From Octopus sinensis (lineage: Eukaryota): DNA of 45,381 nucleotides. The notes under the pieces were generated by a model. It was not told the DNA's origin. It did no database searches and saw only the letters and a list, made by a program, of their open reading frames with translations. Every line of letters starts with the position of its first letter. Position 1 is the stretch's first letter. Below, in pieces: positions 1 through 21,672 of the stretch. A program made the translations under genes and the position numbers. The stretch spans positions 1 through 45,381 of the forward strand of contig NW_021832848.1 in assembly GCF_006345805.1 (NCBI RefSeq). The letters run 5' to 3'.

Positions 1-3000
1 TATAAATATTGAAATACATATATATAATTTGTATATATCATACACATATATAATTGTATATATTCATGTGCAAATATATAATTTGTATATATTTATATAC
101 AAATATATAATTTGTATATTTTATATACAAATATATAATTTGTAATATTTAGATTATGTATATAAATATATACAAATTATTATATAATTATATATTCTTG
201 TATATATCTATCTACAAATATACATTTGTATACGTTTATTACATATATATAATTTGTATACGTTTATATACATAAATATACTTTGTATACGTTTATAACA
301 TATATATAATTTGTATACGTTTATATCCATATATATATTTGTATACATTTATATACATATATATAATTTGTATACATTTATATACATATATATAATTTGT
401 ATACATTATATACATATATATATTTGTATACATTTATATACATATATATGATTTGTATACATTTATAGACATTTTATATTTATATATCATTTGTATACAT
501 TTATATACATATATATTAATGTATACATTATATACATATATAATTTGTATACCTTTATATACATATATATAATTTGTATACATTTATATACATATATCTA
601 ATTTGTATACATTTATATACATATATATAATTTGTATACCTTTATATACATATATATAATTTGTATACATATATATAATTTGTATACATATATATAATTT
701 GTATACATATATATAATTTGTATGCATATATATAATTTGTATGCATATTTATAATTTGTATATCTTCATATACATATATGTAATTTGCATATTTTCATAT
801 ACATATATGTAATTTGCATATCTTCATAGACATATATGTAATTTGTATATCTTCATATACATATATGTAATTTGTATATCTTCATATACATATATGTACT
901 TTGTATATATTCATATACATATATGTACTTTGTATATATTCATATACATATATGTACTTTGTATATATTCATATACATATATGTACTTTGTATATATTCA
1001 TATACATATATATACTCTATATATATTCATATACATATATATAATCTGTATATATTCATATACATATATATAATCTGTATATATTCATATACGTATATAT
1101 AATCTCTATATATTCATATACATATATATAATCTGTATATATTCATATACATATATATAATCTGTATATATTCATATACATATATATAATCTGTATATAT
1201 TCATATACATATAAATAATCTGTATATATTCATATACATATATATAATCTGTATATATTCATATACATATATATAATCTGTATATATTCATATACATATA
1301 TATAATTTGTTTATATTCATATACATATATATAACTTGTATATTATCATATACATATAGATTACTTCTATATATCCATATACATATAGATAACTTGTATA
1401 TATTCATATACATATATATAAATTGTATATATTCATATACATATATATAACTTGTACATATTCATATACATATATATAACTTGTATATATTCATATACAT
1501 ATATATAATTTGTATAAATATTCAAATACATATATATAATTTGTATATATTCATACACATATATATAATTTGTATATATTCATATACATATATATAATTT
1601 GTATATATTCATATACAAATATATTATTTGTATATGTTTATAAACAAATATATAATTTGTATACGTTTATATAAATATATATAATTTGTATACATTTATA
1701 TACATATATATAATTTGTATACATTTGTATACATATATATAATTTGTATACATTTATATACATATATATAATTTGTATACATTTATATACATATATATAA
1801 TTTGTATACATTTATATACATATATATAATTTGTATACATTTATATACATATATATAATTTGCAGGCATATATATAAGTTGCATATCTTCATATACATAT
1901 ATATAATTTGCAGGCATATATATAAGTTGCATATCTTCATATACATATATATAATTTGCATATTTTCATATACATATATGTAATTTGCATATTTTCATAG
2001 ACATATATGTAATTTGCATATTGCTATACATATATATAATCTGTATATATTCATATACATATTATAATCTGTATATATTCATATACATATATAATCTGTA
2101 TATATATTCATATACATGTATATAATCTGTATATATTCATACACATGTATATAATCTGTATATCGTTTGTATAAAGTATATAATCTGTATATATTCGTAT
2201 ACATGTATATAATCTGTATATATTCGTATACATGTATATAATCTGTACATATTCGTATACATGTATATAATCTGTACATATTCGTATACATGTATATAAT
2301 CTGTACATATTCGTATACATGTATATAATCTGTACATATTCGTATACATGTATATAATCTGTATATATTCGTATACATGTATATAATCTGTATATATTCA
2401 TATACATGTATATAATCTGTATATATTCATATACATGTATATAATCTGTATATATTCATATACATGTATATAATCTGTATATATTCATATACATGTATAT
2501 AATCTGTATATATTCATATACATATATATAATCTGTATATATTCATATACATATAGATAACTTGTATATTATCATATACATATAGATAACTTGTATATTA
2601 TCATATACATATAGATAACTTGTATATATCCATATGCTTATATATAACTTGTATATATTCATATACATATATATAACTTGTATATATTCATATACATATA
2701 TATAACTTGTATATATTCATATATATATATATAATTTGTATAAATATTCAAATACATATATATAATTTGTATATATTCATAGACATATATATAATTTGTA
2801 TATATTCATATACAAATATATAATTTGTATATATTTATATACAAATATATAATTTGTATATATTTATATATATGTATATAAATATATACAAAATATATAT
2901 ATAATTATATATACTTTGTATATTTTTATCTACAAATATACAATTTGTATACGTTTATATACATATATATAATTTGTATACGTTTATATACATATATATA

Positions 3001-6000
3001 ACTTGTATACGTTTATATACATATATATAACTTGTATACGTTTATATACATATATATAATTTGTATACGTTTATATACATATATATAATTTGTATACGTT
3101 TATATACATATATATAATTTGTATACATTTATATACATATATATAATTTGTATACATTTATATACATATATATAATTTGTATACATTTATATATATATAT
3201 ATAATTTCTATACATTTATATACATATATATAATTTGTATACATTTATATACATATATATAATTTGTATACATTTATATACATATATATAATTTGTATAC
3301 ATTTATATATATATATATAATTTCTATACATTTATATACATATATATAATTTGTATACATTTATATACATATATATAATTTGTATACATATATATATTTT
3401 GTATACATATATATAATTTGTATACATATATATAATTTGTATGCATATATATAATTTGTATGCATATATATAATTTGTATATCTTCATATACATATATGT
3501 AATTTGCATATTTTCATATACATATATGTAATTTGCATATCTTCATAGACATATATGTAATTTGCATATATTCATATACATATATGTACTTTGCATATAT
3601 TCATATACATATATATAATCTGTATATATTCGTATACATGTATATAATCTGTATATGTTCGTATACATGTATATAATCTGCATATATTCGTATACATGTA
3701 TATAATCTGCATATATTCGTATACATGTATATATTCTGCATATATTCGTATACATGTATATAATCTGCATCTATTCGTATACATGTATATAATCTGCATA
3801 TATTCGTATACATGTATATTATCTGCATATATTCGTATACATGTATATAATCTGCATATATTCGTATACATGTGTATAATCTGCATATATTCGTATACAT
3901 GTGTATAATCTGCATATATTCGTATACATGTGTATAATCTGCAATATATCGTATACATGTGTATAATCTGCATATATTCGTATACATGTGTATAATCTGC
4001 ATATATTCTTATACATGTGTATAATCTGCATATATTCATATACATGTGTATAATCTGCATATATTCATATACATGTATATAATCCGCATATATTCATATA
4101 CATGTATATAATCCGCATATATTCATATACATGTATAATCTGCATATATTCGTATACATGTATATAATCTGCATATATTCGTATACATGTGTATAATCTG
4201 CATATATTCGTATACATGTGTATAATCTGCATATATTCGTATACATGTATATAATCTGCATATATTCGTATACATGTGTATAATCTGCATATATTCGTAT
4301 ACATGTGTATAATCTGCATATATTCTTATACATGTGTATAATCTGCATATATTCATATACATGTGTATAATCTGCATATATTCATATACATGTATATAAT
4401 CCGCATATATTCATATACATGTATATAATCCGCATATATTCATATACATGTATATAATCCGCATATATTCATATACATGTATATAATCCGCATATATTCA
4501 TATACATGTATATAATCCGCATATATTCATATACATGTATATAATCCGCATATATTCATATACATGTATATAATCCGCATATATTCATATACATGTATAT
4601 AATCCGCATATATTCATATACATGTATATAATCCGCATATATTCATATACATGTATATAATCCGCATATATTCAATTACATGTATATAATCCGCATATAT
4701 TCATATACATGTATATAATCCGCATATATTCATATACATATATATAATCCGCATATATTCATATACATTTATATAATCTGCATATATTCATATACATATA
4801 TATAATCTGTATATATTCATATACATATATATAATCTGTATATATTCATATACATAATCTGTATATATTCATATACATATATATAATTTGTATATTATCA
4901 TATACATATAGATAATTTGTATATATTCATATACATATAGATAATTTGTATATATCCATATACATATAGATAATTTGTATATATTCATATACATATATAT
5001 AACTTGTATATATTCATATACATATATATAATTTGTATATATATTCATATACATATATATAATTTGTATATATTCATACACATATATATTTTGTATATAT
5101 TCATATACATATATATAATTTGTATATATTTATATACAAATATATAATTTGTATATATTTATATACATATATATAATTTGTATATATTTATATACATATA
5201 TATATTTTGTATATATTTATATACATATATATATTTTGTATATATTTATATATATGTATATAAATATATACAAATTATATATATAATTATATATATTTTG
5301 TATATATTTATATACAAATATACAATGTGTATACGTTTATATACATATATATAATTTGTATACGTTTATATACATATATATAATTTGTATACGTTTATAT
5401 ACATATATATAATTTGTATACATTTATATACATATATATAATTTGTATCCATTTATATACATATATATAATTTGTATCCATTTATATACATATATATAAT
5501 TTGTATGCATATATATAATTTGCATATCTTCATATACATATATATAATTTGCATATTTTCATATACATATATGTAAGTTGCATATTTTCATATACATATA
5601 TGTCATTTGTATATATTCATATACATATATGTAATTTGTATATATTCATATACATATATGTAATTTGTATATATTCATATACATATATGTAAGTTGTATA
5701 TATTCATATACATATAAGTATTTTTTATATATTTATATACATAATTTGTATATATTCATATACATATATATAACTTGCATATAATCATATACGTATATAT
5801 AACTTGTATATATTCATATACATATATATAACTTGTATATATTCATATACATATATATAATTTGTATATATATTCAAATACATATATATAATTTGTATAC
5901 GTTTATATACAAATATATAATTTGTGTACGTTTATATACATATATATAATTTGTATACGTTTATATACATATATATAATTTGTATACGTTTATATACATG

Positions 6001-6678
6001 TATATAATTTGTGTACGTTCATATACATATTTATAATTTGTATCCGTTTATATACATATATATAAATTGTATATATATATACATATATATAATTTGTATG
6101 CATATATATAATTTGTATATATTTGTATGCATATATATAATTTGTATGTATTTACATGCATATATACGGTTTGTATATATTTACATACATATATGCAGTT
6201 TGTATATATTTACATACATATATGCAGTTTGTATATATTTACATACATATATGCAGTTTGTATATATTTACATACATATATGCAGTTTGTATATATTTAC
6301 ATACATATATGCAGTTTGTATATATTTACATACATATATGCAATTTGTATATATTCACATACCTATATGCAATTTGTATATATTTACATACCTATATGCA
6401 ATTTGCATATAATTACATACCTATATGCTATTTGCATATATTTACATACCTATATACAATTTGCATATATTTACATACCTATATACAATTTGCATATATA
6501 TACATTCCTATATACAATTTGCATATATATACATACCTATAGACAAATTGCATATATATACATACCTATATTCAATTTGCATATGTATTCATACCTATAT
6601 ACGATTTGCATATATTTACATACCTATATACAATTTGCATATATTTACATACATATATACAATTTGCATATATACAAT
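1..6678. repeat. AT-rich tandem satellite, ~29-bp monomer (e.g. ATACATATATATAATTTGTATATATTCAT), in homogenised variant blocks; runs off the window start
   Basis: Continuous 29-bp periodicity. Variant blocks include ATACATGTATATAATCTGTATATATTCAT, ATACATGTGTATAATCTGCATATATTCGT and a 19-bp deletion variant. All Y/I/H/C-rich ORFs here are repeat translations. Confidence 0.97.
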
Positions 6679-6883
6679 TGTCTTTAAAGCATACAATGTA
6701 GAGAAAAAAAGAAGATTTGAACACCTGGAGGAAAGCACCATCGAAAAGTGTCTTGGTGCGACTATGAAAGATATCCCCGCAGAAGTAGAGGTAGCCACAC
6801 TTCTACACCAGAGGGAGGACAAAATACAATTGGTCGAATTTGCAAGAGACGGGCCTACAATTCCAGTCTGTTATATATTTTGA
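6679..6883 (+). other. Short unique, coding-like segment (VFKAYNVEKKRRFEHLEESTIEKCLGATMKDIPAEVEVATLLHQREDKIQLVEFARDGPTIPV), identity unknown
   Basis: Open frame of ~65 codons with protein-like composition, directly after the satellite. No family recognised and no clear splice donor. Confidence 0.2.
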
Positions 6884-7009
6884 GTATTGTTATCACTAGC
6901 GATATCAAGATATAACATTGTATTTTGTATTTTATGTGTAAATGTATATATATGTATATATATGTGTTCATGTAATATGAACACATATATATACTCATAT
7001 ATACATGGA

Positions 7010-7139
7010 CTAGCACTATGAAACTAAGAATGTGTATCTGTCTGTCTATGTGAATCCCTATAACTTGAGAACTACACAACCAATTTCATTCAAATTTTAC
7101 ACACACCTTGCTTAGGGTCCACGGAGTGTCAGGAGCAAG
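7010..7139 (+). mobile_element. Probable fragment of a Helentron/HINE (DINE-like) non-autonomous element core
   Basis: (TCTG)n microsatellite followed by AACTACACAACCAATTTCATTCAAATTTTACACA, resembling the core of invertebrate DINE/HINE-like elements. No termini seen. Confidence 0.3.
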
Positions 7140-9506
7140 GCTCTGGGCGCCGTTGGGCTCACTGTCCACGGCTACGAGACCACGGTGAGCGCTACGGCGC
7201 CCAGAGCTCGCTCTGGGCGCCGTTGGGCTCACTGTCCACGGCTACGAGACACGGTGAGCGCTACTGGCGACCAGAGCTCGCTCTGGGCGCCGTTGGGCTC
7301 ACTGTCCACGGCTACGAGACCACGGTGAGCGCTACGGCGACCAGAGCTCGCTCTGGGCGCCGTTGGCTCACTGTCCACGGCTACGAGACACGGTGAGCGC
7401 TACGGCGACCAGAGCTCGCTCTGGGCGCCGTTGGGCTCACTGTCCACGGCCACGAGACAACAGTGAGCGCTACGGCGACCAGAGCTCGCTCTGGGCGCCG
7501 TTGGGCTCACTGTCCACGGCCACGAGACAACAGTGAGCGCTACGGCGACCAGAGCTCGCTCTGGGCGCCGTTGGGCTCACTGTCCACGCTACGAGACCAC
7601 GTGAGCGCTACGGCGACCAGAGCTCGCTCTGGGCGCCGTTGGCTCACTGTCCACGGCTACGAGACCACGTGAGCGCTATGGCGACCAGAGCTCGCTCTGG
7701 GCGCCGTTGGGCTCACTGTCCACGGCCACGAGACAACGGTGAGCGCTACGGCGACCAGAGCTCGCTCTGGGCGCCGTGGGGCTCACTGTCCACGGCTACG
7801 AGACCACGGTGAGCGCTACGGCGACCAGAGCTCGCTCTGGGCGCCGTTGGGCTCATGTCCACGGCTACGAGACCACGGTGAGCGCTATGGCGACCAGAGC
7901 TCGCTCTGGGGCCCGTTGGGCTCACTGTCCACGGCTACGAGACCCGTGAGCGCTACGGCGACCAGAGCTCGCTCTGGGCGCCGTTGGGCTCATGTCCACG
8001 GCTACGAGACCACGTGAGCGCTATGGCGACCAGAGCTCGCTCTGGGCGCCGTTGGGCTCACTGTCCACGGCTACGAGACCACGGTGAGCGCTACGGCGAC
8101 CAGAGCTCGCTCTGGGCGCCGTTGGGCTCACTGTCCACGCTACGAGACACGGTGAGCGCTACGGCGACCAGACTCGCTCTGGCGCCGTTGGGCTCACTGT
8201 CCACGGCCACGAGACAACAGTGAGCGCTACGGCGACCAGAGCTCGCTCTGGGCGCCGTTGGGCTCACTGTCCACGGCCACGAGACAACAGTGAGCGCTAC
8301 GGCGACCAGAGCTCGCTCTGGGCGCCGTTGGGCTCACTGTCCACGGCCACGAGACAACAGTGAGCGCTACGGCGACCAGAGCTCGCTCTGGGCGCCGTTG
8401 GGCTCACTGTCCACGGCCACGAGACAACAGTGAGCGCTACGGCGACCAGAGCTCGCTCTGGGCGCCATTGGGCTCAATGTCCACGGCTACGAGACCACGG
8501 TGAGCGCTACGGCGACCAGAGCTCGCTCTGGGCGCCGTTGGCTCACTGTCCACGGCTACGAGACCACGGTGAGCGCTACGGCGACCAGAGCTCGCTCTGG
8601 GCGCCGTTGGGCTCACTGTCCACGGCTACGAGACACGGTGAGCGCTACGGCGACCAGAGCTCGCTCTGGGCGCCGTTGGGCTCACTGTCCACGGCTACGA
8701 GACCACGGTGAGCGCTACGGCGACCAGAGCTCGCTCTGGGCGCCATTGGGCTCACTGTCCACGGCTACGAGACACGGTGAGCGCTACGGCTACCAGACGC
8801 TCTCGGGCCTGGGCGCCGTGGGGCTCACGTGTCCCCGGCTGACTACTGGACATCAGTACGCGTACGCTAGGCGACCAGAGCTCGCTCTGGGCGCCGTTGG
8901 GCTCACTGTCCACGGCTACGAGACCACGGTGAGCGCTACGGCGACCAGAGCTCGCTCTGGGCGCCGTTGGGCTCACTGTCCACGGCCACGAGACAACAGT
9001 GAGCGCTACGGCGACCAGAGCTCGCTCTGGGCGCCGTTGGGCTCACTGTCCACGGCTACGAGACCACGGTGAGCGCTACGGCGACCAGAGCTCGCTCTGG
9101 GCGCCGTTGGGCTCACTGTCCACGGCTACGAGACCACGGTGAGCGCTACGGCGACCAGAGCTCGCTCTGGGCGCCGTTGGGCTCACTGTCCACGGCTACG
9201 AGACCACGGTGAGCGCTACGGCGACCAGAGCTCGCTCTGGGCGCCGTTGGGCTCACTGTCCACGGCTACGAGACCACAGTGAGCGCTATGGCGACCAGAG
9301 CTCGCTCTGGGCGCCGTTGGGCTCACTGTCCACGGCTACGAGACCACGGTGAGCGCTACGGCGACCAGCTGCTCGCCTGGGCGCCGTTGGGCTCACTGTC
9401 CACGGCTACGAGACCACGGTGAGCGCTACGGCGACCAGAGCTCGCTCTGGGCGCCGTTGGGCTCACTGTCCCGGCTACGAGACCACGGTTGCGTGCGCTA
9501 GCGGCG
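7140..9506 (+). repeat. GC-rich 70-bp tandem repeat, ~33-34 copies, hairpin-forming monomer
   Basis: Unit GGTGAGCGCTACGGCGACCAGAGCTCGCTCTGGGCGCCGTTGGGCTCACTGTCCACGGCTACGAGACCAC. Period 70 (AGACCACGGT at 9061 and 9131); 48/70 G+C; 9 CpG per unit. Confidence 0.97.
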
Positions 9507-9526
9507 TTTGGTCTTACCACTATAAC

Positions 9527-10316
9527 TGGCTGGCTTGGCTTGGCTTGGCTTGGCTTGGCTTGGCTTGGCTTGGCTTGGCTTGGCTTGGCTTGGCTTGGCT
9601 TGGCGCTTGGCTTGGCTGGCTTGGCTTGGCTTGGCTTGGCTTGGCTTGGCTTGGCTTGGCTTGGCGTGGCTTGGCTTGGCTTGGCTTGGCTTGGCTTGGC
9701 TTGGCTTGGCTTGGCTTGGCTTGGCTTGGCTTGGCTTGGCTTGGCTTGGCTTGGCTTGGCTTGGCTTGGCTTGGCTTGGCTTGGCTTGGCTTGGCTTGGC
9801 TTGGCTTGGCTTGGCTTGGCTTGGCTTGGCTTGGCTTGGCTGGCTTGGCTTTGTTGCTTGGCTTGGCTTGGCTTGCTTGGCTGGCTTGGCTTGGCTTGGC
9901 TTGGCTTTGGCTTGGCTTGGCTTGGCTTGCTTGGCTTGGCTTGGCTTGGCTTGGCTTGGCTTGGCTTGGCTTGGCTTGGCTTGGCTTGGCTTGGCTTGGC
10001 TTGGCTTGGCTTGGGCTTGGCTTGGCTTGGCTTGGCTTGGCTTGGCTTGGCTTGGCTTGGGCTTGGCTTGGCTGGCTTGGCTTGGCTTGCTTGGCTTGGC
10101 TTGGCTTGGCTTGGCTTGCTTGGCTTGGCTTGGCTTGGCTTGGCTTGGCTTGGCTTGGCTTGGCTTGGCTTGGCTTGGCTTGGCTTGGCTTGGCTTTGCT
10201 TGGCTTGGCTTGGCTGGCTTGGCTTGGCTTGGCTTGGCTGCTGGCTTGGCTTGGCTTGGCTTGGCTTGGCTTGGCTTGGCTTGGCTTGGCTTGGCTTGGC
10301 TTGGCTTGGCTTGGCT
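9527..10316. repeat. (TTGGC)n pentanucleotide microsatellite, ~790 bp
   Basis: Nearly pure TTGGC run. The AWLGL/AKPSQ ORFs are its translations. Confidence 0.98.
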
Positions 10317-11168
10317 ACATAGAGAAATATAGCGTGAAGGCAGCATATAAAAAAAAAACAAAAAAAAAAAAACAACCCTTCAGTTGTTGGCAGTTTTACT
10401 TACTCCGCATTGCAACAAGATGTGTCTTCGTTAAAGCAATTGCTCTCCCAAAGCAAATTAGATAAAATTTGACATACGTGGAACGTCAAAGCTGCTAACA
10501 AAATCAGGACAGTCAAAATTTTCGCTAAGGGCTGTTTAACCCTAACGAGGTGACATGGTGAACGCTGCAGAAAGAAAGCTTTGTCAAGAGACAGACGGGA
10601 ATGCATGAACGAAAAGAAAAAGAATTACATTTAGAAATAGATCTATAGTTATTGAGGACAGAATTTCTGTTAGAAATAGAGAACTATAAATATTGAATTA
10701 TGCATAAAGCGCTGACTTACATTCGGGGCTTCCAATTTCTCTGTAAAATATAAGATTGTCGCAAAATCATCGCACATGTCACCATCGATTACAAATGCCG
10801 GTGGAAGATAAACGTTCCAGAGGACATTCTTGTTCTTTCGTTCGTACAAGGATCGTATTATGTTTCGGCTTAAATAAATTATAGATACAAATATAATGTA
10901 TAGAAATATATAAAAACCAGAATAGAAAATAAACGTCTTAGGCATATAAAATGAGATAACATGAGATATCAAGGTGTTTTAAACTTGAAACTTACTAGAA
11001 TATCATAGATTATATATATCAAGTCATCCAGTCAGTTCTGTCCAATTTTACTGTTTTTTAGATTTGAATGAAATTTAATAGTATTTGCAAATGTCTAATT
11101 CAATTAAAAATTATTTTTATGCATTTGTGTACGTTTAAACTAATTCAATATTGTTTTACAAAATAATA

Positions 11169-12490
11169 GACGGTGTCCACAAAGACTGCGTACATGGGAA
11201 TTAACACATACTTTTAAAACAAAACAATTTTATTTTTATAATGTTAATATAATATTTTCAAAGTGATTTCCATCATTTTCAATGCATAACTTGATGCGCC
11301 TTGCAAAATTCAGGTGAACTTGATTAAATAAGTCTACATTGCCATCAATTTAAGCACACTGACTGGTAATGCGTTCTCTCGTGTGTTTTAAATCTGTAAT
11401 CTTTATTGAGTAAACTTTCTCTTTCAACATACCCCAGAAAAGAAATCAAGGGGAGAAAGGTCTGGTGAACGAGGGGACCATTCCATATGACCCCTTCTTC
11501 CAATCTAGTGAGGAGGAAAAGTGTCATTAAATCAATCTCTAACAGTTGTGGCAAAATGGGTAGGGGCCCCATCCTGCTGAAACCAATTCGGAAGGCCCTC
11601 GCCTAGGCGCTCAATTTAAGATATTAATTTGTCTCTCAATATATTTGCATAAGTCTCATCCGTTACATGTTCAATGAAGAAGGTCCTAGAACATGAGCTT
11701 CCAAAAACCACACCACACCATCACCTTTTGCTGTCTTGCTGTTTGGATAGATCCATCCAATGTGGATTACCTCGAGACCAGTATAGAAGATTCTGTCTGT
11801 TGACCTCACCATTTACATAAAACGTAGCTTTGTCACTGAACAACACAAAGTTTTTCGTAAAATTGATATTTTCATCCAATTTATCTGAAAACCATTCGCA
11901 CGTCTACATTCGCCTATCAGGATCGTCTTCATTTAAGTGATGCAATATCTGTAGGTTGTATCGATGAAACTTTTCCTCAACCAGCATTTTGTGGATGGTT
12001 GGTTTTGGAACACCTAACACCGTAGATGTCCGACGAAGTGATTTTTGGGGGCTAGCTAGCAGAAACTTTAGCCTCGACAGCCTCTTTAGTTTCATCTGAA
12101 GTCTTTGGTCGCCCGGAACGGGGTTTATCCGAAACACTGCCTGTTTCTTTAAATGTCTTGATCAATTTCCTGACGGCAGTAAAATAAATAGGTTGCCTAC
12201 AAGGGTGTGGAAGATTAAATTCTTCCGCAATTTTGCGATAAGACCATCCCTCTCGTCCACTTAATAATACTAACTCGATTCTTTCTTCTTTAGACAGATT
12301 CATCATTCGATCTGGGATTCTTCTTTCTTCTTTAGACAGAGCCATCATTCGATCATCTGTAGAAAAAATAACAATAAATTTAGAAAAGTAAAGTATTTTT
12401 TTTATTTAATTTAAACAAAAGTAAAAAAGGAAAATTATTATTTCTTATGTTATGATTTTATTCCATAAACCCAGACTTCGTGACACACCC
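11169..12490 (-). mobile_element. Tc1/mariner superfamily DD41D (rosa-like) element, ~1.32 kb, decayed
   Basis: Degenerate TIRs (GACGGTGTCCACAAAGACTG / CAGACTTCGTGACACACCC) each flanked by TA; transposase remnants on the minus strand. Confidence 0.75.
11240..12348 (-). pseudogene. DD41D transposase pseudogene
   Basis: HTH region (KTFKETGSVSDKPRSGRPKT); FSDKATF; WFQQDGAPTH...WSPRSPDLSPLDFF. Hand count gives 41 residues between the QQD aspartate and the PLD aspartate. Trp codons mutated to TGA/TAG. Confidence 0.85.
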
Positions 12491-12521
12491 TAAAATTGCT
12501 TTGATTAAAACCCCTTTCAAC

Positions 12522-13520
12522 ATGGAAGTATCCAAGGAGCATTTAAGGCACATATAATTCTTTATGAGTACAATAAAGGTAACTCTGCTGCCGAAGTGAC
12601 TCGAAACATACACTCAGTTAATGTTTATGGCAAAGTGCTCGAATGAAAGAACTTGCAGGAGATCGTCTGCAAAATTGAAGATGAATATCGAACAGGATGT
12701 CCAGTTGAGTTTGACAAGCTCCTTGAGGCATTACTTGAAGAAAATCCGTCATTATCAGTTGAAGAATTGGCAATAAAGCTTACTTCAAACCATACAACAG
12801 TTCATCGTCATCTACAACAACGTGGAAAGATTCCTAAACTTGGATAATAGGTGCCTTATGTATTGTCCGAAAGCAACCGCAAATCCCGAGTTGGCATCTG
12901 CTCTTCTCTCCATTCTCGCAAACTCATTTCACCATTTTTCGATAGACTTGTGATGAAAAATGGATTTTCTATCGAAATGTTAGACGTCGTAAACAGTGGC
13001 TTGGTAAAAGGGAAAATTCTCAACCACAACCGAGAAGGGAACTTCATGGGAAAAAGGTTCTACTCTCTATCTGGTGCGATTGCAAAGGCGTAATTCACTT
13101 TATATTGTTACCACCTAATGCAACAATCAATGCTCAAGTCTACTGTCAGCAATTAGAGCGTTTGAACCAAGCTTTGAAGGAAAAAAACCGCTTTAGTGAG
13201 TTGAAAACGAGTGATGTTTCATCAGGACAATCGCAACCCCACACTGCAAAGATCACATCACAGAAGATCGAAGGGGTCGGTTTGGAAAAATTTCTTCATC
13301 CAACTTATTCTCCCGACCTTACTCCTTCAGGATACCATTTGTTTCATAGTTTACAGAATTAGTAGGGGGATACAACTTTCGCAAGCCAGGGGAGGTCGAA
13401 CCTGACATTTCAGAGTTCTTCGCTTTGAAACCAAAAGAGTTTTACGTTGATGGGATTAAAAAGCTTGTAAATAGATGGAGGTAAGTCATAGATAATTAGG
13501 GAAAGTACATTGATGATTAA
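12522..13520 (+). pseudogene. Mariner transposase pseudogene
   Basis: MEVSKEHLRH...YEYNKGNSAAEVTRNI; HRHLQQRGKIPKLG..VPY (WVPHEL-like); FHQDN; HPTYSPDLTPSGYHLF (YSPDLAPSD motif, last D changed to G). Multiple frameshifts and stops. Confidence 0.9.
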
Positions 13521-13990
13521 CTTTCAATTAAATATAACATTTGATCACTTGTATTATTTATCCAAAATTCAGACAGAACTTATGGGATGACCTGAGATAT
13601 ATACACTGGCGAAATATATTTAAGACAGACGATAAAAGTTCTATTTCTTACAAATATTTTGTTACTAACACCATACAAATTATTTTTATCTTTTACACCT
13701 TATGCAAATTTATTTCGCTTTCGAATGATGCAGACAATAACCATTTTTATACTACTTGAAGAATTCTAATGCTAAATATAATTTTAATGGAGATAACCTG
13801 CAGTATATAGTACAACATTTTTGTCTCCGTATATGAGCTAAGTATTAATAAAATGTGGTATACGATAAAAATTTCGGATATTTGTCTTAAAACATTCAGA
13901 CAAGAAAATTCAGATGTAGCACATGAGGTATTATTCCATACGAATATCCACATATTTATATTAAGAATTTCATGATAAAAATATAAAATA

Positions 13991-14474
13991 TTGGGTTGTC
14001 CGGAAAGTTCTTGCAGATTTATAGTAGCTTATCTTTCGACTTATTTTAGAACATGTTTGAGTCCATAAAATAGGATTTGACTACACCTCCATTTGGAGCA
14101 CAGTTTAATCTATCTTTTCGTGGAAGAGGTTTATGTTCCAATAACCTGTGTTAATTCTGTAAACCTTTAAATTAAAAGATGAGAAAAATTCATTATCGGC
14201 ATTTGATGCTTTGGGAACCAGACAAAAATTGCTGCAGCAGCTTGGCTGGGGTGACTTACCCCACCCTCCATATTCACCAGATATTACTCCTTCGGATTTC
14301 CACTTATTCAGGTCTCTGCAGAATAGTCTTAATGGTGAAAATTTCAATTCCTTAGATGACGTAAAAAGATACCTTGATGAATTATTTGCCTTGAAACCAC
14401 CCCAATTCTGGGAAGAGTATTTAGTGACCATGTACTTTCCTTAAAAATCGGAACGAACTTTCCGGACAACCCAA
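13991..14474 (+). mobile_element. Internally deleted mariner derivative (484 bp)
   Basis: Matching TIRs TTGGGTTGTCCGGAAAGTTC / GAACTTTCCGGACAACCCAA with TA on both sides. N-terminal MRKIHYRHLML (ATG 14179) is joined out of frame to C-terminal HPPYSPDITPSDFHLFRSLQN. Confidence 0.92.
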
Positions 14475-14849
14475 TAAAACATAACAATGAAATACAAATA
14501 AAAACATGAAAAATAAAACCTAAATTGAAAGAGGCGATTAAATTTTTTTTCCTAACCTGCAGCCGTTTGTTGTACGAAGTATTCGAAATTCAGCCCTCCT
14601 TCCTCAGGGTTCCTTTCTCGAGGTAAAATCCAGCAGAAAGCAGTAAGGCACTACATGACGAGTATTCAGTTCGTGAAAGTTCAGTTTTATTCATTGTTGA
14701 CCAGTTTTTCAAGAGGATTGCCACGTTTAAATAAGAAATGAAAATCGTTTAGTTAATCATGCAATTTTGGGAATGTTCCATTTTTTACTGATATATACTA
14801 CAATAACAAAGAAATTATTTAAGATTTTAGATTTATGCATTCTTATGGT

Positions 14850-15130
14850 TCCAAAACGCATGGTTCTCAGTTCAGTCCCACTGTGTGGTAACTTGGCATG
14901 TGTCTTCTACTATAGCCTGAGACCAACCAAAGCCTTGTCAGTGGATTTTGTAGACAGAAACTGAAAGAAATCAATCGTATATATATGTATGTATGTATGT
15001 AGTAGTGTGTGTGTCTTTGTGTTTCTCCCTCATCACTGCTTCACAACTGGTGTTCGTTTATTTATCCCCATACATACTGGTTTCACAAGAAGAAACTGAT
15101 AGAATAAGTACCAGGCTTATCAAAATTTAA
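14850..15130 (+). mobile_element. Degenerate tRNA-derived SINE (family A of this window)
   Basis: CATGGTTCTCAGTTCAGTCCCACTG...GTGGATTTTGTAGACAGAAACTGAAAGAA...GATAGAATAAGTACCAGGCTT matches the other copies in the window. Confidence 0.75.
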
Positions 15131-15242
15131 AAAAGCTCTACGCAGTGTCTCACATTTTTGTTTGCCCACTCAGTTGTATCTATCAATTTTATTTGTGTGT
15201 GTGTATGTGTGTGTACATAATATATATATGTATATATATATA

Positions 15243-15304
<62 letters not shown>

Positions 15305-15372
15305 ATTTCGTGGACAGGAACTGAAACAAATCAATCGTATATATATGTATGTATATATGTAAGTGTATGTGT

Positions 15373-18031
15373 TTTAGTATTGGCAACATGAATGACAATA
15401 GCCAGAGACTACTTGAATTTTGCACATACCATAACCTGTGCATCACCAACACATTCTTTCCCAACAAGACATCCCACAAGGCATCTTGGAGACATCCAAG
15501 ATCTCACCACTGGCATCAGTTGGATCTCATCATTACACGAAGATCCTTTCTGAATTCTGTTCAACTGACCCGTAGCGCGGATTGTGAGACAGATCATTCA
15601 CTAATAAGAAGGGTGAGGATTCTGCCTAAAAAGTCCATCACTCCAAGAAAATTAGCCAACCACGCATTAACACTGCCAGAACCTCGAACCCTACACTGCG
15701 ACAATGTTTTGCTGTGTTTTTATCAAGGTTGCCCTCAGTAGCTGCCCAACCTCCTCTGCTGAAAGTAGGTGGAATTATATCAGGGAAGCTTTGTATACCA
15801 CATCAATAGATACTTTCGGAATGAGAGAAAGGTAAAACCCAGATTTTGTTCAGTGCTGGGCTCTCAGAGCTGGAACCAGTTATCGAAGCAAAGCGTACAG
15901 CTCTGATGCAATACAAGAGTGGTCTTCTACAAAGTCACACGAAGAACTCAGAAAGGCAAGAAATAAAACCCAACTGACTGCCAGACGCTATGCAAATGGG
16001 TATTGAAAGGAAATCTGTCAGAGTATCCAGTCAGCTGCTGACAGTGGCGACACCCGTGGGATGTATGCCGGTTTGAAGAAGGCCCTCGGTCCATCCGCAA
16101 ATACCTCAGCCCCTCTGAAATCAACTACTGGAGATCTCATCAGGGACCAAAGCAAGCAAATGGATAGATGGATGGAGTACTACCAGGATCTCTACTCACG
16201 AGAGACCACGGTAGCTGAGGCTGCAATCGAGGGTGTCAAGATCTTGCCAGTCATGTGTGAACTTGACAGTCTGCCATCTATAGCAGAGCTCACCAAATCT
16301 ATTGACTCCCTAGCAAGTAACAAGGCTCCGGGAAAAGACGGCATCCCCTTAGAGATCATCAAAACCGGCAAAAACACCATCCTGCTTCGGCACATTCATG
16401 AGCTTCTGTGTCAGTGCAGGTAAGAGGGTACAGTCCCTCAGAATATGCGGGATGCTAACATCATTACGCTTTACAAAAATAAAAGTGACCGTGATGATTG
16501 TAACAATTACCGTGGAATATCTCTTCTAAGCACAGTTGGAAAGGCCTCTGCTTGCATTATCCTGTCCAGGCTGCAACTAATTGCTTCTCGAATTTATCCA
16601 GAATCGCAGTGTGGCTTTAGAAGCAGATCAACTATTGACATGATATTCTCCATACGCCAACTTCAGAAGTCCAGAGAGCAGAACATGCCATTATATATGG
16701 CCTTCATTGATCTGACAAAGGGCTTTGACTTGGTAAGTAGAAAAGGCCTCTTCATCCTGCTCCAAAAAATCGGATGTCCACCAAAGCTGCTGAGGATCAT
16801 CAAATCATTCCATGCTAATATGCAAGGCACCATACAGCACAATGGTTCAACATCAGCCGCCTTCCAAATAAAAAATGGGGTAGAGCAAGGTTGTGTCCTT
16901 GCTCCTACATTATTTGGCATCTTCTTCTCGCTGCTGCTGTCACATGCCTTTGAGACATCAGATGATGGAGTGTTTCTGCACAGTAGAAGTGATGGGGAAC
17001 TGTTCAATCTCTCGCGTCTGCGTGCCAAGACCAAAATTTCAGAAGCATCCTGATCAAGGAGATGCTATTTGCAACTGTTTTGAGCAAGCATTTGGCAACT
17101 TTGGCTTAGTTATCAGCCTCAAGAAGACCAACATCATGGGTCAGGCTACATCGGACATCCCAAACATACATATTGGAGACCACAGAGTATAGGAGGTGGA
17201 GAAGTTTACCTATCTTGGCTCTACCGTCACCTACAACCTATCCCTTGATGCTGAGCTCAATATACGCATTGGCAAGGCAGCTGCTGTGATGGCCCAACTC
17301 ACCAAACGCGCATGGGACAACAATAAGCTGACCAAGACCACAAAAATGAAGATTTACCAGGCATGTGTACTTAGCACTCTACTGTATGACTTTGACGCCA
17401 TACACACGCCATACGACGCCATACGTCGCCTAAATATCTTTCACCTGCGCTGTCTCCGGAAAATCCATCGCATCAAATGGCAGAATCATGTCCCTAACAA
17501 AGATGTCCTCAAGCAAGCAGGAATACCAAGCATGTTTGCACTCTTCACACAAAGACGTATGAGATGGCTTGGACATGTTAGCCGTATGGAAGATGGCAGA
17601 ATCCCCAAGGACATACTCAACGGAGAGCTTGCTAGGGGCACTAGGTCTGTGGGAAGACCGTTCTTACGATACAAGGATGTTTGCAAAAGGGACATGAATG
17701 CCTGCAACATCAATATTACCAACTGGGAAGCAGTTGCCAGCAACCGTGGAGATTGGCGACGTACCGTGAAAGAGGGAACACAAAGGAGTGACACAGTGAG
17801 AAAGGAGAAATGGAAAGACAAGAAAAGACGTCAACAAGAAACTATGACATTACAACCAGTCAGGCAAAGTCTTCGCTACATTTACGGCACCTGCCAGAGG
17901 GAGTGTTTGTCCCGGATAGGACTACACAGCCACAGCAAGAGATGTATTAGGACATGAAATGTAAAAGCCGGACAAGATTATTTTATGCGCAACTCCATTG
18001 TCTCCCGAGACAAAAAGGATGCCAACAACAA
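15373..18031 (+). mobile_element. 5'-truncated, decayed RTE-clade (BovB-like) LINE
   Basis: AP-endonuclease end (ITNTFF..WRHPRSHHWHQLDLII); RT (KAPGKDGIP, NYRGISLLS, QCGFR, FIDLTKGFD, GVEQGCVLAPTLF); C-terminal CQRECLSRIGLHSHSKRC; 3' end GTCTCCCGAGACAAAAAGGATGCCAACAACAA. Frameshifts present and the FADD motif is deleted. Confidence 0.95.
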
Positions 18032-18036
18032 TATAT

Positions 18037-18260
18037 ATGGATTTCGTAGACAGGAACTGTAACAAATAAATCGTATATATATGTATGTATATATGTAAGT
18101 GTATGTGTGTGTCTTTGTCTCTGTGTTTCGCCCTCATCACAGCTTCACAACTGCTGTTCACTTATTTACATCCACATAACTTACTGGTTTCACAAGAACA
18201 AACTAATAGAGTAAGTACTAGGCTTATCAACATAAAAAAGCACTAGGCTGTGTCTCATAT
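18037..18260 (+). mobile_element. Remainder of the SINE-derived segment interrupted by the RTE
   Basis: Continues the sequence at 15301-15372 and parallels 14942-15130. Confidence 0.7.
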
Positions 18261-18325
18261 TTTTGTTTGCTCACTCAGTTGTATCTATCAATTTATCTTT
18301 GTATGTGTGCATGTGTGTGTGTATC

Positions 18326-18358
<33 letters not shown>

Positions 18359-19854
18359 CCCTAATGGGAGCCTTAAATCCCAAATTTTAGTAATTTCTTT
18401 TATGATCCAAAACTTGGTCAAAAGTACTGAATGGATCTTTATGAAATTTGGAAATTATATTCTATGCATAAGGGCCATAACACCCATGACAATTCATATA
18501 TTTTTGCTGTTGATGAAATTTTAACCATAGACATTAGACACAAATGAAGTAATATCTATAAAATTTCATCTTACAAAGTTAGAAAGACCCCTCCATGGGG
18601 ACTTAACAACTACAATTTTGTCATTTTATCTAAGCAAAAATGAATACAGTTGTGCTCTTGGAAGCTGTAGGGTTACCCGAGCATAAAAGATGAGCATTAT
18701 TGTAATTCAATGGTACAACAGTGTAACAGTTTGCTTTGACATACACACTGCATAAATTGTCAAGTAAATGAGAGGCATCTTTGCCTCCACTGATTCAGTT
18801 GCAAAGTGTAGAGTAAAATTTATTTGATTGCAGACCTCCTTTCAGTCTTTTTATTATCACTCGGTCACACATAGTCCCCAGATGGTAACATTGATTTCAA
18901 GGCCTTCCCAGATGAGTGACTGGTTATTCGAAGACATTTATAGATTTTAAATTTATTCTGTCCAGTTACGTATCAGTATAGTGGTCATTTGCAAACTACA
19001 GAGGTGACACTTTCATTTCTCCTTAGCTCTCACGTCAAACAGTTGTTAATGTTGATTTCAGTTGGGTCACGCCCTTCCAATTGCTATAGATTTGTAATGC
19101 ATCTTACGGCTGTGCCTGTCACCTGGATGGTGAGGAATCCTACATTAGGAGTGGTAACGACTAGGGTAGGGTAACTGACTGCTTATTGTGATCATTCGTC
19201 TTTTGGTTTCCTGTAGCTTTGCTCTCTTTTACAAACCCAGTGAAAACATATTTCCTATTTCAAAGAAATTCAAACAATAGATATAAGACCCAAGTTAAAA
19301 AGATTTTCAACAATTCAACTTCTCTGGTTGACATTAAGATGCCCACCCCCAACAGGGGCCTTAACTCTCACATTTTAGAGCTCCATGACCTTCATTTTTC
19401 AGGAACAAAAATCTTTTTAACAAGTTAAATAAGACTGGAATTTTGGAATATGCGCATAAAAATTAGGATTATGGGATACATGTGGCACGATTACAATTTT
19501 TTAGGGTGTGTAAAGATTGAAATAACCCTCATCTGCAATTTTGATGAAATTCGAAACATAGATATTCCAGTTCATCACAGAAGATATAACAGAAAAGTCT
19601 AATTCTCCAATTGAATGTAATCGGGTAACGCCGGGTATCTCTGCTAGTTATATATAAATATAAAAAAGTAAAAGATATGCAATAAATATAAATATGTATA
19701 TAAAAGTAAAAATGTGCATATATATATATATACATATTCTTTCTTTTCTTTTTTTATTCTTTATTGTTTCGACCCGAACACTTCTTTAAAGTAATTCTAT
19801 ATATTTCGCAAGAAAGAACAATAATATTATGTATATACATGCCACCATCGGGGG

Positions 19855-20310
19855 GACAAACACAAACACACACACAGTTCCGTCTACCAAATTCACTCAC
19901 AAGGCTTTGGTTGGCCTGAGGCTCTAGTAGAAGACCAAGGCGTCGCGTAATGGGGCTGAAACCAGAACCATGTAGTTGGTAAGCAGGCTACTTACCACAC
20001 AGCCACTCATGCATATGTATGTGTGTGTGTGTGTGTTGTGTATGTGGTGTGTGTGGTGTGTGTGTGTGTGTGTGTGTGGTGTGTGTTTGTGTGTAGTTTG
20101 ACAAGTGTCAATGAACGAAACTCTCGCCCCCCGAGTCACTCTGTTGCTTCTGCTAAATATTGATAAACACATATATGACAAGCTTTTTCAGATTCCGTCA
20201 ACCAAATCTACTCACAAGGGTTTAGTCGACCCAGGGCTATAGTAGAAACACCCACTCAAAGTGCCACGCAGCTGGACTGAACCGGAACAGCTTACAACAC
20301 AGTCACGCCT
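19855..20310 (-). mobile_element. Two partial family-A SINE copies (~19855-20010 and ~20175-20310) separated by (GT)n
   Basis: TTCCGTCTACCAAATTCACTCACAAGGCTTTGG...CTTACCACACAGCCACTC, the reverse complement of the SINE head. Confidence 0.75.
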
Positions 20311-20340
20311 GCTTCTATTCACATATATACATGATATATA

Positions 20341-20564
20341 TTTCTTTTGCTACCCACAAGGGGCTAAACATAGAGGGGACAAACAAGGACAGACAAACGG
20401 ATTAAGTCGATTACATCGACCCAGTGCGAAACTGGTACTTTATTTATCGACCCCGAGAGGATGAAAGGCAAAGTCGACCTCGGCGGAATTTGAACTCAGA
20501 ACGTAGACGAAATACTGCTAAGCATTTCGCCCGGTGTGCTAACGCTTCTGCCAGCTCGCCGCCT
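20341..20564 (-). mobile_element. tRNA-derived SINE, family B (Nin/Deu-domain-like)
   Basis: Minus strand: A-box-like GGCAGAAGCGTTAGC, B box GAGTTCAAATTCC, central GCCTTTCATCCTCTCGGGGTCGATAAAT-AAGTACCAG. Confidence 0.85.
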
Positions 20565-20707
20565 CTTGCATATAAATCTATGTGCGTATATAGACACAGT
20601 TATACATACACATACCTAGTCATGGATGGCTACACACACTAACACACACGTACACATACACGTGCAAGTAGTCACACGAGTGTACACACAACACACACAT
20701 ACGCACG

Positions 20708-20738
<31 letters not shown>

Positions 20739-21119
20739 ACTCGCACGCACGCACATAATCTCCTTCCTCTCACCCTTATTCTTCTAAGCAAACACACATA
20801 TACACACATAGAAAGGCATGCATGCACGCAGACATAAGATTAATTCGCGGCCAAATTTCAGGGCAGACGTTGAAGAGAAAGGACAAGCTATTGAAAAGGT
20901 CGCGAAAAATAGCGACGAACGGACTTTCACGAAGAAATAAAACTTGATTGTTAACCAAACAAACGATCGATTACGAAGTTGGTCAGATGTGTAACCATAT
21001 CGTTATTGGCATAATGACCCTCCCATGAATCAACCAAGTATGTGTGTGTATACGTGTGTGAGTGTGTGTGCGTATGTGTATATATGTATGTGTGTGTGTA
21101 TATGTATGTGTGTGTGTGT

Positions 21120-21250
21120 GGCAAAAACAGACTGATAGAATAAGTACTAGGCTTACAAAGAATAATCCCTAGAGTCGATTTGCTCGACTAAAGGCAGTGC
21201 TCCAGCATGGCCAAAGTCAAATGACTGTAACAAATAAAAGAATAAAGAGT
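21120..21250 (+). mobile_element. 3' fragment of a family-A SINE
   Basis: GATAGAATAAGTACTAGGCTTACAAAGAATAA...CTCCAGCATGGCCAAAGTCAAATGACTG. Confidence 0.75.
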
Positions 21251-21279
21251 ATATATATACATATATATATATATATATA

Positions 21280-21672
21280 CTAGCAGTGTCGCCCGGCGTT
21301 GCTCGGGTTTGTAAGGGAAATAACTATATAAGCTTTTAGAGATGTAAAATATAATAGCCATCTCAATATGGCTAACCACAAAGGGGGAGTGTTACTGTAG
21401 CTTTTTACATTCTGAGATTTAATAATACATTTTAGAGAGTACTTCCCTTATATAAACCGAGCGAAAATGCATTAAAAATGCGGAAAAAATTATGGTAATT
21501 TTTTTTAAAATCGTAAACTCATCGTAGACGTGCGCTAATACCCAGAAGGGCTCGATATGAATCACGACTATAAGATACCCGCTTTTGGTTACACTGCACC
21601 GCAAAATGAGGGAGTAGTTAGGAATCTAAATCGTAGGAGACAGACACACAACTTCACTTTTATATATAAAGA
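21280..21672 (-). mobile_element. Non-autonomous Helitron (~393 bp), subfamily 1
   Basis: Minus strand starts TCTTTATATATAAAAG and ends with the CCCGAGCAACGCCGGG hairpin then CTAG. Inserted between A and T, no TSD. Confidence 0.88.

What the first reader, a model, noticed from the sequence alone, without database searches (positions are those of the whole stretch)
7140..9506. Array of ~34 GC-rich 70-bp units, each a near-perfect hairpin with wobble-compatible variation
Within each unit, GTGAGCGCTACGGCGACCAGAGC-TC-GCTCTGGGCGCCGTTGGGCTCAC pairs at 20 of 23 positions (mismatches G.G, U.U, A.G) and extends by three more pairs. Recurrent variants tend to preserve pairing on the plus strand. ACAGTGAGC versus ACGGTGAGC swaps A-U for G.U opposite GCTCACTGT; CTATGG gives U.G; GTGGGG turns U.U into U.G. 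One variant (CCATTG) breaks a pair. A transcript would be a string of ~55-nt stem-loops separated by ~15-nt linkers, resembling a hairpin-RNA/small-RNA precursor array or a protein-binding scaffold. As DNA it is a cruciform array. At 69% GC with 9 intact CpG per unit, it is a strong compositional outlier here. The 2-4 nt loop and ~26-bp stem argue against a canonical Drosha substrate. I found no hammerhead core in it.
Basis: partly seen in the sequence, partly recalled or inferred. Interest (0 to 1): 0.72.

Follow-up and report, generated by a model that had tools for sequence, protein, structure and literature searches.

The report
Palindromic GC-rich octopus minisatellite array
The 70-bp hairpin array is real, but it is most likely an ordinary non-coding tandem repeat whose unit is a DNA palindrome, sitting inside a large repeat block that occurs at a dozen or more places in the common-octopus genome, and nothing found here shows it makes a structured RNA.

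Summary
Observation confirmed. Window 7140-9489 holds 33.7 tandem 70-bp units (94% match), 67.8% GC, CpG obs/exp 1.06, 9 CpG per unit. Each unit carries a 26-position imperfect palindrome with 3 fixed mismatches.

The RNA interpretation is not supported. Both strands fold. There is no Rfam match. Within the window there is no true covariation.

The translated repeat found 16 junk gene models, all in Octopus vulgaris. Eleven fetched loci on 9 sequences gave 13 further arrays. All share one layout: a 29-bp AT-rich satellite (12 of 14 arrays), a conserved leader, the 70-mer array (0.3-4.4 kb), a conserved tail, compound microsatellites, then 10-20 kb of colinear sequence. That sequence ends at a sharp shared terminus (window 30267).

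Over 326 monomers, the three mismatches are invariant. Two pairs switch compensatorily (21:48, 8:61), which is nominally marginal (p about 0.04). Two stem-breaking changes are fixed in whole arrays. Rare variants hit stem and non-stem sites equally.

Best reading: a dyad-symmetric minisatellite module of a dispersed composite repeat, evolving by unequal exchange. Hairpin-RNA or cis-element roles remain untested. The core 26-mer is absent from prokaryotic, viral and metagenome collections, so it is not a contaminant.

The parts
1..6676 (+). 29-bp AT-rich satellite (about 211 copies, cut by the window start). It is the upstream partner of the 70-mer array.
   Evidence: TRF. The same satellite lies directly upstream of 12 of the 14 arrays examined.
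6674..7139 (+). Conserved 466-bp spacer. The last ~115 bp (about 7025-7139) is a leader found next to every array. It contains an AT-rich palindrome at 6942-7010.
   Evidence: 85-99% identical in L001-L003, L006, L007 and L010. Only the last ~115 bp is shared with L004a/b, L009, L011 and the L001 mini-array.
7140..9489 (+). The finding: 33.7 tandem copies of a 70-bp GC-rich unit. Each unit is a 26-position imperfect palindrome (unit positions 8-33 / 36-61) plus a 16-nt linker. Two monomer subtypes occur (GACCACGG and GACAACAG). One degenerate stretch lies at 8768-8918.
9490..9526 (+). Degenerate half unit plus conserved tail (GGCGTT.GGTC..ACCACTATAAC) that closes the array.
   Evidence: A related tail follows the arrays of L002, L005, L007 and L008.
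9527..10316 (+). (TGGCT)n microsatellite, 159 copies. It is part of a compound microsatellite block, (TGGCT)n/(ATTT)n/(CAA)n, whose components differ in length between loci.
10317..30267 (+). About 20 kb colinear with the other loci at 93-99.7% identity. It carries old mariner-type and LINE remnants and a window-specific 2.5-kb insertion at 21744-24257. It ends at a sharp terminus ...CTGAAAAGATCC, beyond which the loci differ.
   Evidence: blastn. Terminus. Pfam RVT_1, HTH_32 and Transposase_1.

Best explanation
The array is a non-coding GC- and CpG-rich minisatellite (satellite-DNA family) whose 70-bp monomer is an imperfect DNA palindrome. It is one fixed module of a large composite repeat unit of the Octopus vulgaris-group genome.

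The unit runs: 29-bp AT-rich satellite, spacer/leader, 70-mer array, tail, compound microsatellites, then about 20 kb of old transposon-riddled sequence with a defined end. It is present at 12 or more loci on 9 or more chromosomes or scaffolds.

Shown: each array is homogenised internally and carries private variants, and copy number ranges from 5 to about 62.

Inferred: this pattern reflects unequal exchange, replication slippage and gene conversion, probably helped by the monomer's own hairpin or cruciform potential. The hairpin is a property of the DNA sequence on both strands. The plus-strand 'wobble-compatible' variation in the window comes from recurrent transitions at CpG sites that face each other across the palindrome, together with long-read assembly noise. 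No sequence-specific RNA function is needed to explain anything seen. How the whole unit spread (transposition of a very large element versus segmental duplication) is not resolved, though the shared sharp terminus favours a mobile-element end.
For: Array and palindrome.

Non-coding: the period is not a multiple of 3, every frame has stops (the plus strand has one stop per 210 nt, the minus strand three), and no Pfam family passes its cut-off.

Only Octopus vulgaris 'hypothetical proteins' match the translation. There are 16 models on 9 sequences of GCA_951406725.2. Their ATG is created by the C21>T variant, so they look like ab initio artefacts.

The same module order holds at 11 fetched loci, including two loci on each of OX597840.1 and OX597843.1.

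Concerted evolution with array-private variants: a 73-bp monomer in L002, G8/C61 in L007, T5/A35 in L006, G16 in all 41 monomers of L010.

No purifying signal on stems. Rare substitutions run at 0.85 per stem site versus 0.94 per non-stem site (p=0.66). Array-level changes are 7/52 stem versus 5/18 non-stem (p=0.27). Stem-breaking changes are fixed or common: C58>A in 143 monomers and C16>G in L010.

The same two CpG sites (21, 48) mutated singly in non-adjacent window monomers and jointly elsewhere, which indicates mutational hotspots.

Deletion load per monomer in the window (0.67) matches L004b, L007 and L008 (0.59-0.84) of an ONT-based, Illumina-polished assembly (PMC10700109).

No Rfam family matches. 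The core is absent from prokaryotic, viral and metagenome collections.
Against: Two base pairs switch compensatorily between arrays. Pair 21:48 is C-G in 131 monomers and T-A in 179, with only 12 intermediates. Pair 8:61 goes A-T to G-C in L007. Pair 10:59 is G.T or A-T.

L002's 3-nt insertion lengthens the stem by 4 bp, taking the DNA hairpin from -23.4 to -29.4 kcal/mol.

Two doubly hit pairs among 7 array-level stem changes has a nominal chance of 0.04. This hints that dyad symmetry is retained by selection or by a templated-mutation process.

The three mismatches are invariant in all 14 arrays. They are of the stabler type on the plus strand (G.G, T.T, A.G versus C.C, A.A, C.T), so the plus hairpin is 2-7 kcal/mol better.

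Six of 9 CpGs are intact everywhere and CpG obs/exp is 1.06, which is unusual for junk in a genome at 0.72.

Transcription, small RNAs, methylation and protein binding were not testable here.
Confidence: 0.7

Rival explanations
1. Tandem hairpin-RNA precursor. The array is transcribed (plus strand) into a chain of about 55-nt stem-loops. These are diced or otherwise processed into endo-siRNAs or piRNA-like small RNAs, as with the tandem hp-CG4068 hairpins of Drosophila. The small RNAs perhaps silence the composite unit itself.
For: Stable local hairpins form on the plus strand, 2-7 kcal/mol better than on the minus strand. The internal mismatches are invariant and two pair switches are compensatory. 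Copy number varies between loci, as in hp-CG4068 clusters (PMC10317233). Gene models begin in the array, although these are explainable as ab initio ORFs.
Against: Compensatory switches are strand-neutral and few, and one involves facing CpG hotspots. Stem-breaking changes are fixed in whole arrays. Rare variants are not depleted in stems. In a multi-unit transcript the minimum-energy fold is long-range nesting of arms from different units, not separate hairpins. No target homology is known. There is no Rfam hit. A 26-bp stem with a 2-4-nt loop is not a Drosha/miRNA substrate.
Confidence: 0.1
2. Cis-acting module of a very large mobile or self-propagating element. The tandem palindromes would be binding sites for a dimeric DNA-binding protein (transposase-like, insulator or centromere-type). 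Alternatively they form a CpG-island-like promoter or origin, like the monomer arrays in mouse L1 5' UTRs or the central repeats of Helentron-derived HINE/DINE-1 elements.
For: The array keeps a constant position and orientation within a unit that has a precise shared end in the window, L006 and L007, plus an inverted copy in L001. The leader and tail are conserved, and microsatellites adjoin the array as in HINEs (PMC7492417). The 26-nt core is perfectly invariant and CpGs are retained.
Against: No transposase or other element-specific ORF was found in the unit apart from nested mariner and LINE remnants. The other end, any TIRs and any target-site duplication were not found. HINE sub-terminal repeats were not identified, and the colinear block is 10-20 kb rather than 0.5-3 kb. 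Invariance of the core can be explained by recent homogenisation.
Confidence: 0.17
3. Assembly artefact or foreign (bacterial or viral) contaminant joined to octopus sequence.
For: There is an abrupt GC jump from 14-25% to 68%. Many 1-nt deletions and one garbled stretch are present.
Against: Identical junctions on both sides recur at 11 other loci on 9 sequences, with locus-specific variants. The core has no exact match in 185,579 prokaryotic genomes, IMG/VR or JGI metagenomes.
Confidence: 0.01

Closest known systems
Satellite/minisatellite DNAs with dyad symmetry (non-B-form-prone satellites; Kasinathan & Henikoff 2018, PMC5889037)
   Same: Head-to-tail non-coding monomers, multi-locus distribution, concerted evolution, and monomers predicted to extrude hairpins or cruciforms on both strands.
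   Different: The dyad here is far longer (26 positions versus under 10 bp). The arrays are short (0.3-4.4 kb) and GC/CpG-rich. Chromosomal (centromeric) location is unknown. Loci occur more than once per chromosome.
Tandem-repeat-carrying non-autonomous Helentrons of molluscs and flies (Cg_HINE of Crassostrea gigas, PMC7492417; DINE-1, from my own knowledge)
   Same: Short satellite-like arrays dispersed through a mollusc genome. They are bounded by conserved left and right flanks, with an adjoining variable microsatellite and a nearby palindrome.
   Different: Sub-terminal inverted repeats and the 3' palindrome terminus were not identified. The conserved flanks extend 10-20 kb. The microsatellite lies on the opposite side unless the element is read in reverse. 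The arrays reach 62 copies.
Tandem hpRNA cluster hp-CG4068 of Drosophila (20 tandem hairpins from one transcript, Dicer-2 dependent siRNAs, target mus308; PMC10317233)
   Same: Tandem copies each able to form a hairpin, with copy number varying between related genomes or loci.
   Different: There is no evidence of transcription, small RNAs or a target. The stems are only 26 bp. The arrays are multi-locus and embedded in a repeat unit.
Tandem monomer promoters of mouse L1 5' UTRs (from my own knowledge)
   Same: CpG-rich tandem monomers at a fixed position in a multicopy element.
   Different: No downstream ORFs belong to the unit and no promoter evidence exists. The monomers here are palindromic.

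Membership tests
Satellite / minisatellite DNA | Head-to-tail tandem monomers of uniform length | tested here: met
   70 bp x 33.7, 94% match. There are 13 further arrays of 1 to about 62 monomers.
Satellite / minisatellite DNA | Non-coding | tested here: met
   The period is not divisible by 3. Stops occur in all frames. No Pfam family is above cut-off. Only array-derived 'hypothetical' models match.
Satellite / minisatellite DNA | Several genomic arrays showing concerted evolution (within-array homogeneity, between-array differences) | tested here: met
   Array-private fixed variants occur in L002, L006, L007 and L010.
Satellite / minisatellite DNA | Heterochromatic or centromeric location | not testable with these tools
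   No cytogenetic or chromatin data are available. Loci lie at varied positions, two per chromosome on two chromosomes.
hpRNA / endo-siRNA hairpin precursor | Transcribed, and yields Dicer-dependent small RNAs from the stem | not testable with these tools
   No RNA data are accessible. Gene models starting in the array are explainable by ORF content.
hpRNA / endo-siRNA hairpin precursor | Pairing conserved through compensatory change on the transcribed strand | tested here: inconclusive
   Two compensatory pairs are seen (98 of 500 shuffles reach this; nominal p 0.04). Set against them are two fixed stem-breaking changes and no strand bias by site.
hpRNA / endo-siRNA hairpin precursor | Sequence homology of the arms to a target gene | not tested
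   No octopus transcript or genome DNA search was available. The 26-nt arms are too short for the protein searches used.
Canonical miRNA cluster | Stem of about 33-35 bp with a terminal loop of 10 nt or more; match to a known family | tested here: not met
   The stem has 26 positions and the loop 2-4 nt. There is no Rfam hit at gathering score, and the best in the array is E=0.1 at 28 bits versus 53.
Self-cleaving-ribozyme satellites (hammerhead etc.) | Ribozyme catalytic core | tested here: not met
   No ribozyme family is reported at E<=1 on either strand.
Helentron-derived HINE with central tandem repeats | Conserved flanks on both sides of a short array, with an adjoining microsatellite | tested here: met
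   A leader of about 115 bp, a tail of about 27 bp and compound microsatellites are found at all loci.
Helentron-derived HINE with central tandem repeats | 11-12-bp sub-terminal inverted repeats, a 3' terminal palindrome, and element size of a few kb | tested here: inconclusive
   These were not identified. Colinearity extends 10-20 kb beyond the array. The only defined end...AAAAGATCC, lies about 20 kb away. The 5' end is unknown.
Prokaryotic repeat (REP/CRISPR) or contaminant | Presence in prokaryotic or viral sequence; unique spacers between repeats | tested here: not met
   There are zero exact matches of the 26-nt core. Units abut without spacers.

The most novel reading that the evidence does not exclude
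The AT-rich satellite + palindromic GC-rich array + microsatellite + ~20-kb body is a giant satellite-carrying mobile element of octopuses. Within it, the 70-mer array is a functional module that holds its dyad symmetry under constraint. It would act either as a tandem hairpin-RNA (endo-siRNA/piRNA) source or as a protein-binding, promoter or origin array.
Probability: 0.12. Interest if true: 0.7.

Novelty: new member of a known kind. Interest (0 to 1): 0.33.

Why it matters
Taken at face value this is one more satellite family. Its value is descriptive: no octopus satellite DNA or composite repeat of this kind turned up in the literature searched. It generates at least 16 spurious 'hypothetical protein' gene models in the O. 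vulgaris annotation, including a chimeric 'MTO1 homolog' model.

If the dyad symmetry proved to be under constraint, or the 30-50-kb unit proved to be mobile, it would give a tractable example of how satellites are carried around a cephalopod genome. It would also show whether long palindromic monomers act through DNA structure or through RNA.

Tried and rejected
- Rfam at gathering score on the whole window, and at E<=1 on 6600-9600. Nothing relevant was found. The only hits with E below 0.01 are an AT-rich palindrome in the spacer matching repeat-derived miRNA models, far below threshold.
- tRNA scan: none found.
- Exact-core scans of prokaryotic genomes, IMG/VR and metagenomes: zero matches.
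- 'One locus per chromosome, hence centromere-linked': rejected. OX597840.1 and OX597843.1 each carry two loci.
- 'A different microsatellite motif at each copy, hence a retrotransposon-style tail': rejected. The loci share a compound (TGGCT)n/(ATTT)n/(CAA)n block whose parts differ in length.
- 'All gene models are on the plus strand, hence plus-strand transcription': rejected. My queries were plus-frame only, and the plus strand has one stop per 210 nt against three on the minus strand.
- 'CpG decay explains all variation': only partly true. CpG transitions are 5 of 18 possible types, against 20 of 52 for other transitions.
- Looking up a window ORF to identify the source record found nothing.
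- My first megablast check wrongly suggested that L010 and L011 lack the AT-rich satellite. A more sensitive blastn showed that they have it.
Full report
**1.
Tandem Repeats Finder reports window 7140-9489 as 33.7 copies of a 70-bp unit: 94% matches, 2% indels, score 4089. The raw sequence shows the array running into a degenerate half unit that ends near 9526.

The 26-nt core GGCGACCAGAGCTCGCTCTGGGCGCC occurs 30 times on the plus strand, only inside the array, against 0 expected. The array is 67.8% GC with 286 CpG (obs/exp 1.06). The rest of the window is 34.9% GC with obs/exp 0.72, and the satellite just upstream is 13-25% GC.

In the register CGAGAC..., positions 8-33 pair with 36-61. The unit folds at -41.1 kcal/mol as RNA (z = -4.8) and -25.2 as DNA (z = -5.5).

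**2. The variation inside the window does not point to an RNA.**
I aligned 31 clean units and counted pairs over the 26-position helix. Fifteen pairs never vary. The only two 'changes on both sides' lie in unit 9339-9408, where an indel has scrambled the loop region.

The recurrent variants are as follows:
- G10>A turns G.U into A-U. It is linked to C7>A in the same unit and T69>C in the preceding linker, so it marks a monomer subtype.
- C21>T occurs in 4 units.
- G48>A occurs in 2 units.
- T50>G occurs in 2 units.

Positions 10, 21 and 48 are CpG sites. Positions 21 and 48 are partners of the same pair, so the same mutational process gives a plus-strand wobble on one arm and a minus-strand wobble on the other.

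About 20 single-base deletions sit mostly in short homopolymers (CC, GG, GGG). Stretch 8768-8918 is garbled and matches no other locus. The deletion load of 0.67 per monomer equals that of several arrays in the ONT-based, Illumina-polished O. vulgaris assembly (PMC10700109). I take it to be largely assembly noise, which is an inference.

The minus strand also folds well: RNA -35.7 for the window consensus and -32.1 for the commonest monomer. A six-unit transcript prefers long-range nesting of arms from different units in its minimum-energy fold.

Rfam gives nothing at gathering score. In a permissive scan, no hit inside the array is better than E = 0.1, and no ribozyme family appears. No tRNA is present.

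**3. Where else the repeat occurs.**
The invariant core has no exact match in 185,579 prokaryotic genomes, IMG/VR or JGI metagenomes. No eukaryotic DNA collection was available, so I searched the protein collection with the translated repeat.

The matches are 16 proteins, all 'hypothetical predicted protein [Octopus vulgaris]' except one chimeric 'MTO1 homolog'. They lie on nine sequences of GCA_951406725.2. Their start codon is the ATG created by the C21>T variant (CTATGG). The plus strand has only one stop per 210 nt, so these look like ab initio artefacts.

Fetching the DNA around 11 of them gave loci L001-L011 and 13 further arrays. The window is not identical to any of these loci.

**4. 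The array is a module of a large composite repeat.**
The order of parts is the same in every locus.
- A 29-bp AT-rich satellite of 6-21 kb lies upstream of 12 of the 14 arrays.
- A spacer follows. Its last ~115 bp (window about 7025-7139) is a leader next to every array.
- The 70-mer array spans 0.3-4.4 kb.
- A conserved tail of about 27 bp closes it.
- A compound microsatellite block, (TGGCT)n/(ATTT)n/(CAA)n, follows, and its components differ in length between loci.
- Then comes sequence colinear with window 10.3-30.27 kb at 93-99.7% identity.

That body contains mariner-type (HTH_32, Transposase_1) and LINE (RVT_1) remnants shared between copies. It also carries copy-specific insertions and deletions, for example window 21744-24257, which is absent from L006 and L007.

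In the window, L006 and L007 the colinearity stops at exactly the same base (...CTGAAAAGATCC, window 30267), with unrelated sequence beyond. L001 carries an inverted copy of the last 268 bp ending at the same base. A shared precise end favours a mobile-element terminus. However, the other end, terminal inverted repeats and target-site duplications were not found, so how the unit spread remains open.

Other arrangements were seen:
- L004 has two arrays head-to-head around one AT-rich array.
- L009 is a short, deleted copy with five monomers.
- OX597840.1 and OX597843.1 each carry two loci, so the repeat is dispersed rather than present once per chromosome.

**5. Structure conservation tested across 326 monomers from 14 arrays.**
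The three mismatches are invariant: 317-322 of 326 monomers keep each one.

Points in favour of constraint on the dyad:
- Pair 21:48 is C-G in 131 monomers and T-A in 179, with 12 intermediates.
- Pair 8:61 is G-C in the L007 array and A-T elsewhere.
- Pair 10:59 is G.T in the window and L010, and A-T elsewhere.
- L002's 73-bp monomer has a 3-nt insertion that adds four pairs.
- Two doubly hit pairs among seven array-level stem changes has a nominal chance of 0.04.

Points against:
- The 21:48 switch joins two facing CpG sites, and these also mutate singly and repeatedly in the window.
- The tool's pair-count measure is reached by 98 of 500 shuffles.
- C58>A (G.A mismatch) is present in 143 monomers.
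- C16>G (G.G in mid-stem) is fixed in all 41 monomers of L010.
- Array-level change is not significantly rarer in stems (7/52 versus 5/18, p = 0.27).
- Rare substitutions are equally dense in stem and non-stem positions (0.85 versus 0.94 per site, p = 0.66).

All the compensatory switches are strand-neutral. Wobble-type states arise at one site for each strand. The only consistent plus-strand bias is that the three fixed mismatches are of the more stable kind on that strand (2-7 kcal/mol).

Verdict: there is a weak, strand-neutral hint that the palindrome is retained, and no evidence for a plus-strand RNA.

**6. Best explanation and rivals.**
I commit to a dyad-symmetric, CpG-rich minisatellite that expands, contracts and homogenises by unequal exchange, slippage and conversion within a dispersed composite repeat (confidence about 0.7). 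Array-private variants and the copy-number range are shown. The turnover mechanism, and any contribution from hairpin extrusion, are inferred from established satellite biology.

The rivals are:
- a tandem hairpin-RNA source of the hp-CG4068 kind (PMC10317233), at about 0.10;
- a cis-acting module (protein-binding, promoter or origin) of a giant mobile element, with Helentron-derived HINEs of oysters (PMC7492417) and L1 monomer promoters as analogies, at about 0.17;
- artefact or contaminant, at about 0.01.

**7. Comparison with what is known, and novelty.**
The array meets the defining features of satellite/minisatellite DNA that could be tested. It fails the tests for miRNA clusters, ribozyme satellites and prokaryotic repeats. 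It resembles HINE-type repeat carriers in layout but not in size or in identified termini.

Satellites prone to non-B DNA are well known (PMC5889037), although a 26-position dyad filling three quarters of the monomer is at the long end. Literature searches found no description of octopus satellites or of this unit.

I rate it a new member of a known kind, of modest interest. The practical by-product is that it seeds spurious gene models in the reference annotation.

Noticed in passing
window 1-6676: A 29-bp AT-rich satellite of about 211 copies, with a subtype shift at 6086-6673. It is physically coupled to the 70-mer array at 12 of 14 arrays, so the two form a bipartite AT-rich/GC-rich satellite pair.
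   Followed up: partly
window 30267-30626: The shared end of the large repeat unit (...AAAAGATCC) is followed immediately, in this copy only, by about 350 bp of degenerate telomere-like (TTAGGG/TTTTAGGG)n. L006 and L007 have unrelated flanks at this point.
   Followed up: partly
L001 1879-2146; L004 64664-86241: L001 has an inverted copy of the last 268 bp of the unit, about 10 kb upstream of its AT-rich array. This could be a terminal inverted repeat or a separate fragment. L004 has two 70-mer arrays head-to-head around one AT-rich array.
   Followed up: partly
window 6942-7010: An AT-rich near-perfect palindrome in the spacer gives sub-threshold Rfam hits to repeat-derived miRNA families (mir-297, mir-1277, mir-466; 44 bits versus gathering 90). 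I judged this to be low-complexity noise.
   Followed up: no
window 12052-13405, 15349-17957, 21744-24257: Mariner-type transposase remnants (HTH_32, Transposase_1) and two LINE reverse-transcriptase fragments. The second sits in a 2.5-kb insertion, together with a 63-bp x4.4 tandem repeat, that is absent from L006 and L007.
   Followed up: partly
O. vulgaris annotation (P0001-P0016; L003, L004, L006, L007): Sixteen annotated 'proteins' are translations of the 70-mer array. Three models splice the array to a low-complexity exon 16-19 kb downstream. One fuses real MTO1 exons, a mariner fragment and the array. These are probable annotation artefacts.
   Followed up: partly
window 39865-40940, 36959-37435, 25971-26126: Other tandem arrays: a 170/354-bp unit x6/x3 that looks SINE-derived (no tRNA called), a 106-bp unit x4.5, and a 52-bp unit x3 at 99% identity.
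   Followed up: no
L010 8547-11481: All 41 monomers of this array carry C16>G, a G.G mismatch in mid-stem, together with G10.T59. This shows that a stem-weakening change can sweep a whole array.
   Followed up: yes
window 44430-45274: CAC/CAT-rich imperfect trinucleotide tracts that give long low-complexity ORFs on both strands.
   Followed up: no
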